64,000 nucleotides of DNA, taken from positions 7,068,001 through 7,132,000 of the forward strand of contig CATNEN010000039.1 in NCBI GenBank assembly GCA_950097015.1, given 5' to 3'. Shown one piece after another: positions 49,786-57,300 of the stretch (positions within the stretch are counted from its first letter, which is position 1; each line of letters opens with the position of its first letter). The translations under genes and the position numbers were made by a program. A model generated the notes under the pieces. The model was not told the DNA's origin, made no database searches, and saw only the letters and a list, made by a program, of their open reading frames with translations. The stretch is from Macrostomum hystrix. Taxonomy: Eukaryota; Animalia; Platyhelminthes.

Positions 49786-51861
49786 ATGCAGTCCGCAGCT
49801 GACGATCCTACGGAGAGCGACCGCTACTGCTATCTGCGCCTGTCCGACCTTACTCAATCTGAAATCCCAGCTGGAGCGGCCCAACAATGCGCCGCTCACT
49901 GCCGCTCCGTGGCCGACTTTCAGAAACTAGAACGGATCGGCGAAGGCACCTACGGTGTTGTCTATCGCGCCCGCGACCTAGAAAACGAACAACCCGTGGC
50001 GCTGAAACGGGTGCGCATGAGCCAGCAGGATGGCAGTCGGCACGGCTTGCCAATGTCTTCGCTGCGCGAGATCAGCCTACTGCTCCGCTGCCGGCACGAG
50101 AACATTGTGCAGCTTCGCGAGGTGGCTGTTGGTCGCGGCCTGTCGCACATCTTCCTCGTGATGGAATACTGTGAGCAGGATTTAGCTAGCCTCATCGACA
50201 ACATGCCAGCCCCGTTCACCGAGGCCCAGGTCAAGTGCATCATGCTGCAGGTGAGGCTCCTCTTTACTGACCTTGTGACTTTTGGTTCCTGAGGGGCCAA
50301 TATCCTTGAGCCGAAGAGCTTGATGTCACATTCATTTTGACTTGAGGTCGCTTTCTGAGGGACATACATTAGTAGCTTGTGAGTTGAGGTAGCTTTCTAA
50401 GGGACATACATTAGTAGCTTGTGAGTTGAGGCCGCTTTCTGAAGGACATACATTAGTAGCTTGTGGGTTGAGGTCGCTTTCTGAGGGACATACATTAGTA
50501 GCTTGTGAGTTGAGGTCGCTTTCTGTGGGACTTACATTAGTAGCTTGTGAGTTGAGGCCGCTTTCTGAGGGACATACATTAGTAGCTTGTGAGTTGAGGC
50601 CGCTTTCTGAGGGACATACATTAGTAGCTTGTGAGTTGAGGCCGCTTTCTGAGGGACATACATTAGTAGCTTGTGTGTTGAGGCCGCTTTCTGAGGGACA
50701 TACATTAGTAGCTTGTGAGTTGAGGTAGCTTTCTAAGGGACATACATTAGTAGCTTGTGAGTTGAGGTAGCTTTCTGAGGGACATACATTAGTAGCTTGT
50801 GAGTTGAGGTAGCTTTCTGAGTGACATACATTAGTAGCTTGTGAGTTGAGGTAGCTTTCTGAGGGACATACATTAGTAGCTTGTGAGTTGAGGCCGCTTT
50901 CTGAGGGACATACATTAGTAGCTTGTGAGTTGAGGTCACTTTCTGAAGGACATACATTAGTAGCTTGTGAGTTGAGGTCGCTTTCTGAAGGACATACATT
51001 AGTAGCTTGTGAGTTGAGGTCACTTTCTGAAGGACATACATTAGTAGCTTGTGAGTTGAGGTCGCTTTCTGAAGGACATACATTAGTAACTTGTCGGTGA
51101 TTCGGAGGAATGAAAAAGAAAAACTTCATGATAACTTTGCCATGTTTGCGCTAGGTATTCGACGGTCTAGCCTATCTACACAACAATTTCATAATTCATC
51201 GCGACATCAAGGTTTCCAACCTGTTGCTGACAGATGGAGGCGTTTTAAAAATAGCCGATTTCGGTTTAGCAAGAACTTTCCAGTTGCCTTTGAAACCAGC
51301 TTCCACGCCGGTTGTGGTCACTCTGTGGTATCGGGCCATCGAACTGTTGTTAGGCGATGACAGGCACACCACTGCCATTGACATGTGGTCCGCTGGTTGC
51401 GTCATGGCCGAGCTGCTGCTGAATAAGCCCCTGCTACCCGGACAGTCAGAGATACAACAGGTGAGACTCTTCGATTTGTTATTTCGTGACCCCTGTACGC
51501 TAAGGGTTTATATGTCTATATTAATGGGCACACCATCTAGGTAAACCTGATCATCGAGCTGTTGGGCACTCCGCACGAGGCCATCTGGCCAGGCGTCAGT
51601 CAGCTACCAGCGTTGAGACAATTCAGCCTGCGCCAGCAGCCCTACAACAATCTGCGCCAGAGGCTGCCGGCACTCAGCGAGCGCGGCCTCAGCCTTCTGC
51701 ACCACCTGTTCATGTTCGACCCCGCGCACCGGGCCTCCGCTGCCGAAGCCTACAGCCACAGTTACTTCAAGGAGTCGCCCTATCCCTGCCAGCCCGCCAT
51801 GATGCCCTCGTTTCCGCAGCATCGATTGAAGAGGAGGAAACTTCCACCGCCAAGGGAATGA
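49786..51861 (+). CDS. CDK10: Cyclin-dependent kinase 10
   Basis: Exons 49786-50250, 51155-51460, 51541-51861. [33 protein letters not shown] (PISSLRE equivalent), [62 protein letters not shown]. Confidence 0.95.
50338..51093. repeat. 42-bp minisatellite in CDK10 intron 1 (~18 copies)
   Basis: Unit GAGTTGAGGCCGCTTTCTGAGGGACATACATTAGTAGCTTGT. Confidence 0.96.
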
Positions 51862-51949: not shown

Positions 51950-53045
51950 CTCACTGATTCTTCAGCTGAATCACTGCAGTGCTGTCACTGATCATTCAGC
52001 TGAATCACTGCAGTGCTGTCACTGATCATTCAACTGAATCACTGCAGTGCTGTCACTGATCATTCAACTTAATCACTGCAGTGCTGTCACTGATCATTCA
52101 ATTGAATCACTGCAGTGCTGTCACTGATTCTTTAGCTAAATCACTGCAGTGCTGTCACTGATCATTTAACTGAATCACTGCAGTGCTGTCACTGATTCTA
52201 TAGCTAAATCACTGCAGTGCTGTCACTGATCATTTAACTGAATCACTGCAGTGCTGTCACTCATCATTTAACTGAATCACTGCAGTGCTGTCACTGATCA
52301 TTCAACTGAATCACTGCAGTGCTGTCACTGATCATTCAACTGAATCACTGCAGTGCTGTCACTGATTCTTTAGCTGAATCACTGCAGTGCTGTCACTGAT
52401 TCTTTAGCTGAATCACTGCAGTGCTGTCACTGATCATTCAACTGAATCACTGCAGTGCTGTCACTGATTCTTTAGCTGAATCACTGCAGTGCTGTCACTG
52501 ATCATTCAACTGAATCACTGCAGTGCTGTCACTGATTCTATAGCTAAATCACTGCAGTGCTGTCACTGATCATTTAACTGAATCACTGCAGTGCTGTCAC
52601 TGATCATTTAACTGAATCACTGCAGTGCTGTCACTGATCATTCAACTGAATCACTGCAGTGCTGTCACTGATCATTCAACTGAATCACTGCAGTGCTGTC
52701 ACTGATTCTTTAGCTGAATCACTGCAGTGCTGTCACTGATTCTTTAGCTGAATCACTGCAGTGCTGTCACTGATTCTTTAGCTGAATCACTGCAGTGCTG
52801 TCACTGATCATTCAACTGAATCACTGCAGTGCTGTCACTGATTCTTTAGCTAAATCACTGCAGTGCTGTCACTGATTCTTTAGCTAAATCACTGCAGTGC
52901 TGTCACTGATTCTTTAGCTGAATCACTGCAGTGCTGTCACTGATCATTCAACTGAATCACTGCAGTGCTGTCACTGATTCTTTAGCTAAATCACTGCAGT
53001 GCTGTCACTGATCATTTAACTGAATCACTGCAGTGCTGTCACTAA
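51950..53045. repeat. 34-bp minisatellite with a palindromic core, downstream of the CDK10 stop
   Basis: Unit TCACTGATCATTCAACTGAATCACTGCAGTGCTG; core CACTGCAGTG. Confidence 0.96.
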
Positions 53046-53055
53046 TCATGTTTCC

Positions 53056-53480
53056 TTCATGTTCATGTTCATGTTCATGTATTGTAAACTTCATGTTCAT
53101 GTTCATGTTCATGTATTGTAAACTTCATGTTCATGTTCATGTTCATGTATTGTAAACTTCATGTTCATGTTCATGTTCATGTATTGTAAACTTCATGTTC
53201 ATGTTCATGTTCATGTATTGTAAACTTCATGTTCATGTTCATGTTCATGTATTGTAAACTTCATGTTCGTGTTCATGTTCATGTATTGTAAACTTTATGT
53301 TCATATTCATGTTCATGTATTGTAAACTTCATGTTCATGTTCATGTTCATGTATTGTAAACTTCATGTTCATGTATTGTAAACTTCATGTTCATGTATTG
53401 TAAACTTCATGTTCATGTTCATGTTCATGTATTGTAAACTTCATGTTCATGTTCATGTTCATGTATTGTAAACTTCATGT
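53056..53480. repeat. Compound 34-bp repeat (TTCATG)4-TATTGTAAAC
   Basis: Read directly; some units have only two hexamers. Confidence 0.95.
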
Positions 53481-53565
53481 TTACAATACGTTCTATGTTT
53501 CGTATTGTAATTTTGTTAACATTTTTATTCCTTTACTTTATTCAATAGCACATGTATTAGTATTC

Positions 53566-53571: not shown

Positions 53572-53973
53572 AAAGTTATTTGTAGTGGTGCCTCGTCGTA
53601 CTTGTTTAAAAAATCTGACCTGTTTATCAAATTATGATAAGCACAGTACTCAAAGGCCATAGTTCATTACAATTTCATTGCTTTTGTTGTGCCTTTCACT
53701 GTGACAATTAGTCTACCTTTCTTGAACAAATTGTAAGTTGCTTGTTTGTATTTCTGTTTCTTGAATTACTTACAATTTGTACTTTTAAAATCTAGTTTGT
53801 TGTCATTATTGTCGCTTAATCGAAAATAAAAGCATAGATTATCTAGTTGCCTGATTACCACAACACTACATTGCTTACTGAGTTGAAGGCGTTGTACTGA
53901 CTTTTTTCTGTAGTACTGTTTTAAATACAAAGGAATCGATTTAAGCAAATGTCATAAATGTAATTGGTTCCAG

Positions 53974-54318
53974 TCTACTAGCCGTACAGGGGCATCGGCG
54001 ACTGAGAGCGCAGCGGAGAACCCCGCTGCGCCGCCCCTGGCCACCGTGATTGGCAGCACAGGCCTGAAGCTGACGGTGCTCCAATGGACCGGCGTCGCCA
54101 CGTGGCAATGGCTGGCGAACGATGACACCTGCGGCATCTGTCGGAACGCTTTCGATGGCGTCTGCTCGGAGTGCAAATTTCCCGGCGACGACTGCCCGCT
54201 GGTCTGGGGGCAGTGTTCACATTGCTTTCACATTCACTGCATTATGAAGTGGTTAAACTCGCAGCAGAGCAAACAGCAGTGTCCGATGTGTCGACAGGAA
54301 TGGAAGTTCAAGGAGTGA
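53974..54318 (+). CDS. ANAPC11: Anaphase-promoting complex subunit 11 (RING-H2); no in-frame ATG upstream of the RING domain
   Basis: LKLTVLQWTGVATWQWLANDDTCGICRNAFDGVCSECKFPGDDCPLVWGQCSHCFHIHCIMKWLNSQQSKQQCPMCRQEWKFKE*, intact. Acceptor TTCCAG ends at 53973 in phase 0. Confidence 0.95.
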   Translation, partial: STSRTGASATESAAENPAAPPLATVIGSTGLKLTVLQWTGVATWQWLANDDTCGICRNAFDGVCSECKFPGDDCPLVWGQCSHCFHIHCIMKWLNSQQSKQQCPMCRQEWKFKE

Positions 54319-57300
54319 TTCCAAGCGCGAACCAATGCCCTCACATCATCATATGTTCTTGTCTACATATTTCGATTGAAGTTCAATTCCAATTATTAAT
54401 TTCCGTATAACTGTTGTCAAATATTAAATATAACTCTCTAATATGTGAACTTGCATGTTTCCTTCAAGTGTACCTAATGATAAATCTATATATTTCGTGT
54501 CCTTTTTTCGTCTGTAAATATGCTTCTTTTTTCATGTGATCGATGTATAATCTAGGAACAATTAGCAATGAGAAATCGATTTGAGGTATTATTAAAAAAA
54601 AATGAGACGAGTATGTATGATTATGAGTATGAGTTATGAGGTGTATGAGTTGTATATCCCGCACCCGCACCTACTGTTGATATGTGTTTCGCAGTCATGT
54701 GTATCAGAATTTTCCAATTGGTTAGATCCACTAGCTCTATGCTTTTCACTGTATCTGAAAGCGTGCTTAGTTGTTCCCAAAATACTTATTTGAGTTTGCT
54801 ATTGCGCTTTTTAATGTACATTTTAATCTAATATTATCTGGTACCCTTATATGTAGCAAGCAGACATATATATACCAGTTCTCACTTCTTGCTCAGGCTT
54901 CGTCAAAAAATAGCGCATCCCAAATCTGCCACAGGTTTGTTTCATTCAGTGGCAGGAAGGGCTCAGCTACACGCTTGCACACTAAGAAGTGGTAAAGTTT
55001 AATGCCGCATATCACAGTATTGTTTTTAAATTTTTAAATATCAGACTAAGTTCAGTATTTAAATGTGTCACACGGTATAACAAATACAAAAGCAGTAAAT
55101 CTATTTGTATGCAATACACGAAGAAACTGTACCCTAAGAGTATAATATAAGAGACAACCAAACATCGTAAAATAAATAATAAAATAATTTTAATGGCAGA
55201 TAATTTGCTTTATACTCTCGGTTATTTTGAATAGGTTCAACAAAAAATACGTTTATAGGTTATAAGTTTAAGTTCTCTTCATAGCTTTCGTCTTTATTAT
55301 TGATTTTCGGATCAGGATCGATTGACAAAGTACTGTGAAGAAGAGGGCCTGGTTTCTTGCAACTGACTCTTTTAATTTAACATTATTTCCTTCCAAAAAC
55401 TAGTGCATCTGGTAAACTCACAAAGGAGCACAAGGGTCAAGGTCTGTACTCTAGTCTTTAATCAGTGGCACTACATGTCTTTAATAAGCTATCTATGTTA
55501 GTGTTGCTTTAGCTACTCAGCCTAAATAGGCCTATTAGAAAGCAAGTGTTATCTTGCTACAAGTTCTAGTTTTAGTGTCTATGTGGTTTTTTGTTATATA
55601 AGTTTAACCAAGACTTGACACAGCCTTTCAAATTTAGTTTGAAAGGTTTTATAAAACTACAATATAAAGGTATTGTAAAACTATACAAGCAGATATATAT
55701 TTTCAAAATAGCTATATAAATGCCCTATTATATATTCAGTATCAGAAATCTTAAAGTTAAAGAACAACAGCAACACAATACATGTTTGTGTCAAAATATT
55801 GCTTATATGTACTTGTATTGATCCCAACATATGTAGCTATGGAACAAATATCTATCTAGCAAGTTGCAATATGATAACTAAAACAAAAAATATATAGGGC
55901 CTATTGACATCAAAAGAAAAATCAAGACCCAAAAACAAACTCAGGCCCATGTACTTTTTTGTAAATATTTTTAAAGCCTATTATCTAGAGACAACTATTG
56001 TGCCCTTAAGCATAGGCCTAGTAGTGGCAGATAACTAGGCCTAAGGATGTAGCTGCTTTGACCCTATATGCAAGACTGGGTACATTGTGGCCATGTTGCA
56101 AATTGCAAGTCTACATAGCTAGAGACATGGCTACCAAGGCTTATGGCATAGAAGTGACAATAACTAGGGTAATGTATCATCAACTGAACAGTGTATCTTC
56201 AAAACCAAACAAGAATTTTGACTTCTTCCTTGGTCTCGTGCAAGACAGAAACAAGCTATTGTGTTTCACAGAACAACTAATTTGAAGGTTGAAGAAATTA
56301 TCTACAAGCTGAGGCATGATGTGCAATGAAGCATTAAGAGGAAAGAAAAATATTGACGTTTCAGTAGAAATTTTTATTGCAAAAGCATACTTTTTAACAA
56401 CATTTTTTCAGTATGTACTTTAGACAAAGATTGTATATGGTTGTTTGCCAATTAAATGACCATAAATGTAGTTATTTATAGAGCATGAAAAATGCTATCA
56501 AATTACATAATTCATGATAGTTCACTCCTTAAAATAAGATTAAACCACTCACTCAAATTGTAAAACCAAACATCAAATTCTCTGTTTGGTTTGAAGATAC
56601 ATGAAAATCATTGTTCGGTTTAGATAAAAAGCAGGAATTAACTTTTTTCTATTTGATAAAATAGCAAAAGCAGATACTTTTTAGAAAGATGTAACTGTTT
56701 TCTATAACTCGGCTTTTGATTTATCATCATATCTTAAATAGAAAATCTGTAGCTTAGGTTTGAAGTTAAAAAAATACACATTCTTGTTTGGTTGATGATA
56801 CATTACCCTAAGATCAATGACACTAGGCTATGGCTCTATCCTTAGAAACTGAGATAGATAAACAGACCTGCCATTCTCTAGTCATGGTGTTCAGAAAATC
56901 AACCATATTTAGCTAAGCCTATGATGTATCCTTAACACATATGATTCCATCAATTTGATAGAAATAAAGACATTTTTGTATTTTTTTGTTTCTATTAAAA
57001 ATATTCAACTTTTTAAAAGGAAAGTGCTTAGCTACAACAATGCTGCTCATTGACTCTGCACAAAAGCCACTGTTTGTAAGGCATTGATTAGCAGTTCCTA
57101 GTGATGTAGGAGTGTCTTGATTCCACTGGAAACTGAATAACTGAAGATCTAAGTGGCTAGGGAGACTTTCATTTTCTGGCCTAATTAGAGGCTGAAATAT
57201 CTAAGTGACTAGCTTCTGTCCTTGTTGTAATAGTCAATGACCTGGCCTTGCAGATGCTTGATGGTTACACACTTGTTAAATGGTAGTAATTTCTTCCTTA

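What the first reader, a model, noticed from the sequence alone, without database searches (positions are those of the whole stretch)
53911..54318. APC11 has no genomic start codon before its RING domain; the initiator Met is probably donated by a trans-spliced leader
Seen: the APC11 frame is intact but bounded upstream by TAG (53911-53913), and the first in-frame ATG is inside the RING domain (54244). The position of the canonical Met (MKVKI in other animals) is CTG (54064). A TTCCAG acceptor ends at 53973 in phase 0, where AT-rich sequence switches to GC-rich coding-like sequence. The nearest GTAAGT donor (53733) supplies no in-frame ATG for any of the acceptors at 53973, 53981 or 53989. Known: flatworm spliced leaders end in AUG, which can initiate translation. 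Inference: SL-AUG plus TCT ACT AGC.. yields APC11 with a ~30-aa N-terminal extension, making an essential mitotic E3 subunit dependent on trans-splicing. The alternative is CUG initiation at the ancestral site.
Basis: partly seen in the sequence, partly recalled or inferred. Interest (0 to 1): 0.85.

Follow-up and report, generated by a model that had tools for sequence, protein, structure and literature searches.

The report
APC11 start codon supplied by spliced leader
In this flatworm (Macrostomum hystrix) the only APC11 cell-division gene has no start codon of its own, and its mRNA carries the trans-spliced leader whose last three letters, AUG, sit exactly in frame; the mechanism is already known in flatworms, so this is a clean new example.

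Summary
Every sequence observation was confirmed. They are the in-frame TAG at 53911, CTG (54064) at the position of human Met1, the first in-frame ATG at 54244 inside the RING, the TTCCAG acceptor ending at 53973, and a GTAAGT donor at 53733 that supplies no usable ATG.

Assembled contigs from three public runs in two studies start exactly at the acceptor. They carry a non-genomic leader, GCGAAGACTCAATTTATTGCAT, then G, then TCTACTAGC. No cis-spliced form was seen.

This leader is the published 35-nt Macrostomum SL. The genome encodes it in canonical SL RNA genes elsewhere: GTAAG donor, Sm-like site, three hairpins. The joined form is absent from genomic DNA.

The SL AUG is the first AUG of the mRNA and opens a 115-codon frame covering all of APC11. 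Every other AUG before 54244 is out of frame.

Assembly size and contig count match the published M. hystrix assembly. APC11 is single-copy there. Both M. lignano APC11 models are deposited as "partial" and lack a Met.

Trans-splicing is shown. Initiation at the SL AUG is inferred (about 0.8).

The mechanism is known (Cheng et al. 2006), so this is a new member of a known kind. First-stage notes flag other ATG-less genes in this genome; I did not test them.

The parts
53591..53973 (+). Outron (minimum extent), removed by trans-splicing. It contains the unused GTAAGT at 53733-53738 and the in-frame TAG at 53911-53913.
   Evidence: Low-depth unspliced contigs lie on 53591-53741 (X15) and 53649-53858 (X1). 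They run through the GTAAGT, so that donor is not used in them. The region is AT-rich. Its 5' limit and promoter are unknown.
53968..53973 (+). Trans-splice acceptor TTCCAG. It fits the M. lignano SL-acceptor motif [T/C]TNCAG.
   Evidence: Contigs of X15, X16 and X1 switch from SL letters to genome letters here. The motif is taken from PMC8629364.
53974..54063 (+). N-terminal extension of 30 codons (STSRTGASATESAAENPAAPPLATVIGSTG). It is read in frame directly after the SL AUG and is low-complexity and GC-rich.
   Evidence: The frame is open with no stop. Its C-terminal part, ATV(I/T)GSTG, is conserved in both M. lignano copies; the rest differs by substitutions and a 9-residue length difference.
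54046..54048 (+). In-frame GTG in a GCCACC-GTG-A context. It is a possible near-cognate start (rival reading).
   Evidence: There is no evidence that it is used.
54064..54066 (+). CTG (Leu) at the position of Met1 of human APC11.
   Evidence: Alignment to PDB 5g04_B: human residues 2-84 align to query residues 32-114. Relatives with a genomic ATG further upstream also have Leu here.
54064..54318 (+). Conserved APC11 core (RING-H2) plus the TGA stop at 54316-54318.
   Evidence: Pfam PF12861 E 7.7e-36 and human APC11 E 1e-42. 100% self-hit, and the only APC11-type match in the genome.
54319..54475 (+). 3' UTR. Contigs end at 54472 (X15) and 54475 (X16). An ATTAAA lies at 54423-54428.
   Evidence: table 8. 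The poly(A) site itself was not seen because contigs carry no tail.

Best explanation
This is the single-copy, single-exon APC11 gene of Macrostomum hystrix. APC11 is the RING-H2 catalytic subunit of the anaphase-promoting complex.

Its pre-mRNA is processed by spliced-leader trans-splicing. The 35-nt SL (CGGTCTCTTACTGCGAAGACTCAATTTATTGCATG) comes from SL RNA genes on other contigs and is joined to the TTCCAG acceptor, so the exon starts at 53974. This step is shown.

The terminal AUG of the SL then lies in phase 0 with the exon. It is the first AUG met by a scanning ribosome. It opens a 115-codon frame: Met, a 30-residue low-complexity extension, and the 84-residue conserved APC11 core. This is the initiator (inferred).

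The genome supplies no usable start. The next in-frame ATG is inside the RING domain. All intervening ATGs are out of frame, with ORFs of 5 to 41 codons.

Production of functional APC11 therefore depends on trans-splicing. The same arrangement appears to hold for both M. lignano copies.
For::
- Contigs of 522 nt (X15) and 525 nt (X16) lie on 53973-54472/54475, each with 22 loose letters GCGAAGACTCAATTTATTGCAT before 53973.
- X1, from another study and organism label, shows the same join with 14 loose letters.
- No joints were found in any of the four runs.

SL identity and source:
- the published M. lignano SL is identical, and the acceptor motif [T/C]TNCAG fits.
- the genome holds 29 exact SL sites, and the arrayed ones are followed by GTAAG.
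- the 104-nt SL RNA folds into three hairpins with an Sm-like AUAUUUUUAG (z -3.55).
- no SL-like sequence in the window.
- the SL-exon junction is absent from the genome, so the joined form exists only in the sequenced runs.

Reading frame and copy number:
- the SL AUG gives a 115-aa ORF, and the other AUGs before 54244 are out of frame.
- there is only one APC11 locus.
- the RBX1 paralogue has a normal ATG.

Comparison and literature:
- M. lignano PAA60152.1 and PAA91259.1 are 'partial', 105 aa, lack Met, and start ST.../SSST... like this exon.
- in S. mansoni the SL AUG is in frame in 28% of trans-spliced transcripts, and more than 40 cDNAs need it (Cheng et al. 2006).
- the authors of the M. 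hystrix genome paper describe the final ATG of the SL as a translation start codon.
Against: Translation from the SL AUG was not observed; there are no proteomic or ribosome-profiling data.

The SL AUG has a weak context (U at -3, U at +4), so leaky scanning is likely.

An in-frame GUG at 54046 sits in a perfect GCCACC context, and the CUG at 54064 has G at -3. Either could contribute.

The runs are not on record as RNA (kind '?' or 'RNA?'). They were laid as contigs, which drop rare isoforms, so a minor cis-spliced form cannot be excluded.

Confidence: 0.82

Rival explanations
1. The mRNA is trans-spliced, but ribosomes largely skip the weak-context SL AUG. They initiate at a near-cognate codon: GUG at 54046 (GCCACC context) or CUG at 54064 (the position of human Met1). 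The product would be a nearly canonical 84- to 90-residue APC11.
For: The SL AUG context is poor: UUGCAUGU. GCCACC precedes the GTG at 54046. The CTG lies at the Met1 position. Only the last ~10 residues of the extension are conserved between species.
Against: A ribosome that skips the SL AUG must also ignore nothing else before 54046, yet near-cognate codons are normally far weaker than any AUG.

The frame stays open from the very first exon base in this species. Both M. lignano 5'-partial models also read from their first residue and differ in length by whole residues, although their phase could not be checked at DNA level. An open frame would not be needed for an untranslated leader.

Relatives with their own upstream ATG carry an internal Leu at the same position (P0003, P0006, P0018, P0120). 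The Leu therefore needs no special role.
Confidence: 0.12
2. A cis-spliced isoform from an unannotated upstream exon, or from the CDK10 transcription unit, supplies a genomic ATG. The SL form would then be a by-product.
For: There is low-depth transcription upstream of the acceptor, at 53591-53858. CDK10 lies 2.1 kb upstream on the same strand.
Against: No joint was seen in four runs. The upstream contigs are unspliced and run through the only good donor. That donor gives no in-frame Met with any of three acceptors. The SL-bearing contigs have the highest depth at the locus, 28-40 against about 6. The stretch that was laid began at 53482, so a donor further upstream would have appeared as a loose end at 53973; only SL letters were seen there.
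Confidence: 0.03
3. The locus is a decaying or non-functional copy, for example a retrogene, whose missing ATG reflects loss of function.
For: It is intronless, and its GC content differs sharply from the flanks.
Against: It is the only APC11 in a highly complete assembly. Neighbouring CDK10 exons have the same GC-rich composition. All residues aligned to human APC11 are conserved at E 1e-42 with no stop or frameshift. It is expressed. Two M. lignano copies show the same architecture.
Confidence: 0.03

Closest known systems
Flatworm SL 3'-terminal AUG used as initiator methionine (Cheng, Cohen, Ndegwa & Davis 2006, J Biol Chem 281:733; cited in PMC9851317 and PMC12582326); 'slORFs'
   Same: The SL ends in AUG. 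The AUG is in frame with the recipient ORF. The recipient gene has no usable genomic start, so a correct protein needs the SL AUG.
   Different: The published cases are from Schistosoma mansoni. This one is in a free-living macrostomorphan and concerns APC11. Translation was tested experimentally there, not here.
Macrostomum lignano SL trans-splicing (Wasik 2015; Wudarski 2017; Ustyantsev & Berezikov 2021, PMC8629364) and the M. hystrix/M. cliftonense genome paper (PMC10468722)
   Same: The 35-nt SL is identical. The SL RNA gene has the same architecture (GTAAG donor, Sm-like site, three hairpins). The acceptor motif is the same. The M. hystrix paper already describes the SL ATG as a start codon.
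   Different: The passages of those papers that I searched say nothing on which genes depend on the SL AUG, and APC11 did not come up in them. I did not search them for APC11 by name.
M. lignano APC11 gene models PAA60152.1 and PAA91259.1 (BOX15_Mlig024862g1, BOX15_Mlig031823g1), deposited as 'partial'
   Same: 96% identical over the aligned part. Both lack Met, have Leu at the Met1 position, and begin with Ser/Thr-rich residues like the M. hystrix exon.
   Different: Their extension is 21 residues rather than 30. They are two copies (M. lignano is a hidden polyploid). The missing start is recorded only as 'partial' and is not explained.
Canonical metazoan APC11 (human ANAPC11, 84 aa; PDB 5g04 chain B)
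   Same: RING-H2 core with all aligned Cys/His conserved and the same C-terminus, EWKFKE.
   Different: Human APC11 starts at a genomic ATG (MKVKI...). Here that codon is CTG, preceded by a 30-residue extension. Many invertebrate and metagenomic relatives also have 20- to 60-residue extensions, but with their own ATG.

Membership tests
APC11 (anaphase-promoting complex subunit 11, RING-H2) | Match to the zf-ANAPC11 profile above the curated cut-off | tested here: met
   PF12861 at 122.4 bits against a cut-off of 25, E 7.7e-36.
APC11 (anaphase-promoting complex subunit 11, RING-H2) | Full-length collinear similarity to experimentally solved APC11, better than to RBX1/RBX2 | tested here: met
   Human APC11 E 1e-42 over residues 2-84. 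The best RBX1 match is E 3e-20.
APC11 (anaphase-promoting complex subunit 11, RING-H2) | Distinct from the RBX paralogues of the same genome | tested here: met
   One 100% locus. The other matches are 43-44% identical and RBX-like. One of them has a normal ATG.
SL trans-spliced mRNA (flatworm type) | Transcripts carry a common non-genomic leader joined at an AG acceptor | tested here: met
   There are 22-nt and 14-nt loose ends at 53973 in three runs from two studies. The leader is absent from the window and the junction is absent from the genome.
SL trans-spliced mRNA (flatworm type) | The leader is the 5' exon of a small SL RNA gene with a GT donor, an Sm site and a three-hairpin fold | tested here: met
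   SL|GTAAGA, AUAUUUUUAG between hairpins 2 and 3, MFE -32.6 kcal/mol, z -3.55.
SL trans-spliced mRNA (flatworm type) | The runs holding the joined form are RNA | tested here: inconclusive
   The run kind is '?' or 'RNA? (a guess)'. RNA origin is inferred from contigs bounded by the exon and carrying the SL, and from the junction being absent in DNA.
SL-AUG-initiated ORF (Cheng et al. 2006; slORF) | The SL ends in AUG, in frame with the main ORF, with no stop between | tested here: met
   a 115-codon ORF from the SL AUG.
SL-AUG-initiated ORF (Cheng et al. 2006; slORF) | No genomic in-frame AUG can give a functional protein | tested here: met
   TAG at 53911. The next in-frame ATG, at 54244, leaves 24 aa.
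SL-AUG-initiated ORF (Cheng et al. 2006; slORF) | The protein is actually initiated at the SL AUG | not testable with these tools
   This needs N-terminal proteomics, ribosome profiling or a reporter assay.
Downstream gene of an SL-resolved operon (CDK10-APC11) | Same-strand upstream gene at less than 1 kb repeat-adjusted distance (criterion of PMC8629364), and a polycistronic precursor | tested here: inconclusive
   The distance from stop to acceptor is 2112 nt, of which 1526 nt are tandem repeats, leaving 586 nt. No precursor was examined, because the laid stretch began at 53482.

The most novel reading that the evidence does not exclude
Loss of the genomic APC11 start codon is fixed across the genus Macrostomum (at least two species and three loci). 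APC/C activity, and with it mitosis of the neoblasts, would then be strictly contingent on SL trans-splicing. The weak-context SL AUG would act as a built-in throttle on APC11 dosage. [quoted passage not shown]
Probability: 0.3. Interest if true: 0.55.

Novelty: new member of a known kind. Interest (0 to 1): 0.38.

Why it matters
The case shows, with transcript evidence, an essential and universally conserved cell-cycle gene whose reading frame cannot be completed from the genome alone.

It has a practical consequence for annotation. Pipelines that trim the SL, or that demand a genomic ATG, will call such genes partial, truncated or pseudogenes. That has happened for both M. lignano APC11 models.

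First-stage notes suggest the pattern recurs in this genome (ENDOV, PAFAH1B, PRA1).

It also gives a simple, testable handle on why monocistronic genes are trans-spliced in flatworms. It does not reveal a new mechanism.

Tried and rejected
The M. lignano APC11 loci could not be fetched, so acceptor phase in that species was judged from protein models only.
- AlphaFold2 on the 7-row alignment gave mean pLDDT 48.9. This is too poor to say anything about the extension, so no fold search was made.
- An Rfam scan of an SL locus found no SL family, only the neighbouring U1. The SL gene was therefore judged by its donor, Sm-like site and fold.
- I considered a cis-splice from the GTAAGT at 53733 and rejected it.
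- I considered a retrogene or pseudogene and rejected it.
- I considered a cis origin of the leader and rejected it. There is no SL-like sequence in the window at up to 3 mismatches. The nearest site on the same contig is about 6.2 Mb away and differs in a letter that the contigs do not share.
- The joined product (SL Met plus 114 residues) was not sent to any search tool. All searches used the exon by reference (window:53974-54315). The join was made only inside a local script to list AUGs.
- Two short patterns copied from tool output were typed for pattern searches: the 23-nt SL and the 25-nt SL-exon junction.

Full report
**Observation**

- An in-frame TAG lies at 53911-53913.
- The frame is then open to the TGA at 54316-54318.
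- The first in-frame genomic ATG is at 54244 and would give only a 24-residue fragment.
- TTCCAG ends at 53973, so an exon starting at 53974 is in phase 0.
- GC content rises from about 0.36 to 0.61-0.70 at that point.
- GTAAGT lies at 53733-53738. Joined to 53974, 53982 or 53990 it provides no Met after the last upstream stop.

The product is APC11. Pfam zf-ANAPC11 scores E 7.7e-36. Human APC11 (PDB 5g04_B) matches at E 1e-42, with its residues 2-84 aligned to residues 32-114 of the frame. Human Met1 therefore corresponds to the CTG at 54064.

**Organism**

The window's genome has 220,453,370 bases in 42 contigs. These are exactly the figures given for the Macrostomum hystrix assembly in Table 1 of PMC10468722.

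APC11 is single-copy there. The other RING-box matches are 43-44% identical RBX-type genes. One of them was checked and has an ordinary genomic ATG.

GC-rich exons in AT-rich surroundings are normal for this locus. The neighbouring CDK10 exons look the same. The composition therefore does not point to a foreign gene or a retrogene.

**Transcript evidence**

A run search with the exon and 3' UTR found holders in several studies. Four runs were laid on window:53482-56481.
- In X15 and X16 (study P8, organism G), contigs of 522 and 525 nt lie on 53973-54472 and 53973-54475. They have no differences from the genome. Each has 22 further letters that lie on nothing in the stretch: GCGAAGACTCAATTTATTGCAT.
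- In X1 (study P1, organism A), a 383-nt contig shows the same junction with 14 such letters.
- X2 has a contig from 53975 without a leader.

Position 53973 is the G of the acceptor AG, and the leader gene ends in ATG. The G belongs to the leader, so the mRNA reads ...TTGCATG|TCTACTAGC.

No joint (cis-splice) was reported in any run.

Low-depth contigs on 53591-53741 and 53649-53858 are unspliced and run through the GTAAGT. I read them as outron or pre-mRNA. The alternative is a trace of DNA.

The runs are not on record as RNA. That they are RNA is my inference, based on three points:
- The contigs are bounded by the exon.
- The contigs carry the leader.
- The 25-nt junction is absent from the genome at up to 2 mismatches.

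**The leader**

The published M. lignano SL is CGGTCTCTTACTGCGAAGACTCAATTTATTGCATG, and its acceptor motif is [T/C]TNCAG (PMC8629364).

The 23-nt 3' part of the SL occurs 29 times exactly in this genome. It does not occur in the window.

In arrays on contigs C15, C17 and C42 it is preceded by CGGTCTCTTACT and followed by GTAAGA.

The 104-nt RNA folds into three hairpins, with AUAUUUUUAG between the second and third (z -3.55). This is a canonical SL RNA gene.

**Reading frame on the mature mRNA**

A local script prefixed the SL AUG to the exon. Its results:
- The first AUG opens a 115-codon frame containing all of APC11.
- The AUGs at 54084, 54108, 54122 and 54155 are out of frame, with ORFs of 13, 5, 41 and 30 codons.
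- The next in-frame AUG is at 54244.

By the scanning model (established knowledge) the SL AUG is the expected initiator.

Its context is weak (U at -3, U at +4). An in-frame GUG at 54046 sits in a GCCACC context. A contribution from near-cognate starts therefore cannot be excluded.

**Comparison with relatives**

The best database hit is M. lignano PAA60152.1, 96% identical over the aligned part. It clusters with PAA91259.1. Both are deposited as 'partial', both are 105 aa, and neither has a Met. They begin STAAAAEAAAAPQATVTGSTGLKL and SSSTAAEAAAAPQATVTGSTGLKL.

All three Macrostomum loci thus lack a start, have Leu at the Met1 position, and begin with Ser. They differ in the extension by substitutions and a 9-residue length difference, with the frame intact. 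This is what one expects of a translated but weakly constrained tail.

The DNA of the M. lignano loci could not be fetched, so the acceptor phase there is not proven.

Many close relatives have 20- to 60-residue N-terminal extensions with their own ATG and an internal Leu or Arg-Leu at the same position. Examples are Schistosoma mekongi P0120, Plectus P0118, and the unnamed P0003, P0006, P0010 and P0018. The Leu is therefore older than the loss of the genomic ATG. It is not a sign of CUG initiation.

**What is known**

All reported flatworm SLs end in AUG (PMC12582326).

Cheng et al. 2006 reported that the SL AUG is in frame in 28% of S. mansoni trans-spliced transcripts, and that more than 40 cDNAs need it (as summarised in PMC9851317).

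The M. hystrix genome paper itself calls the final ATG of the SL a translation start codon. Its authors left the ATG on the reads for annotation.

The mechanism is therefore known. What is new is this particular, well-supported case in an essential mitotic gene of a free-living flatworm, and an explanation for two 'partial' M. lignano models.

First-stage notes on this genome list other ATG-less genes: s1-843808 and s1-848211. I did not test them.

**Open points**

It is unknown whether APC11 has its own promoter or is the downstream gene of a CDK10-APC11 operon.
- The distance from the CDK10 stop (51861) to the acceptor is 2112 nt.
- Of this, 1526 nt are two 34-nt-period tandem arrays.
- That leaves 586 nt, which is under the 1-kb repeat-adjusted criterion of PMC8629364.
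- No precursor RNA was examined.

The poly(A) site is only approximated by the contig ends.

**Verdict**

Trans-splicing is shown. SL-AUG initiation is inferred at about 0.8. This is a new member of a known kind, of moderate-to-low interest.

Noticed in passing
L011:1432-2000 (G000:C15), and arrays on C15, C17, C42: SL RNA genes sit in tandem units of about 11,645 bases. Each unit also holds a U1 snRNA gene (Rfam RF00003, 151.7 bits) about 300 nt upstream on the same strand. There are 29 exact SL sites and 14 one-mismatch sites in the genome. Several of the latter end in ATA instead of ATG.
   Followed up: partly
L006, L007, L008, L009 (around position 1480-1525 of each): Dispersed SL copies keep the SL plus about 10 letters upstream of its published 5' end (gCCGTAAAGA). 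They are followed by unrelated sequence instead of the GTAAG intron. They look like retroposed 5' ends of trans-spliced mRNAs. If so, the true SL may be about 44-45 nt rather than 35 nt.
   Followed up: partly
window 51951-53481: Two tandem arrays of 34-nt period (32 and 12 copies) fill most of the CDK10-APC11 spacer. Without them the spacer is 586 nt, within the published operon criterion for M. lignano.
   Followed up: partly
window 50338-51094: A 42-nt tandem repeat of 18 copies at 95% identity lies between the first and second coding blocks of CDK10. It creates a long spurious ORF on the minus strand.
   Followed up: no
window 54573-55153: Low-depth contigs (depth 6-11) in X15 and X16 lie just downstream of APC11, in AT-rich sequence with no obvious ORF. 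They could be an unannotated transcript or read-through.
   Followed up: no
window 56162-56481: A highly covered segment (depth up to about 390) has several different loose ends before 56165 and many variant letters. It looks like an exon of a multi-copy or alternatively spliced gene, or a repeat.
   Followed up: no
window 54040-54050: A GCCACC-GTG-A Kozak-like context surrounds an in-frame GTG six codons upstream of the Met1-equivalent CTG.
   Followed up: partly
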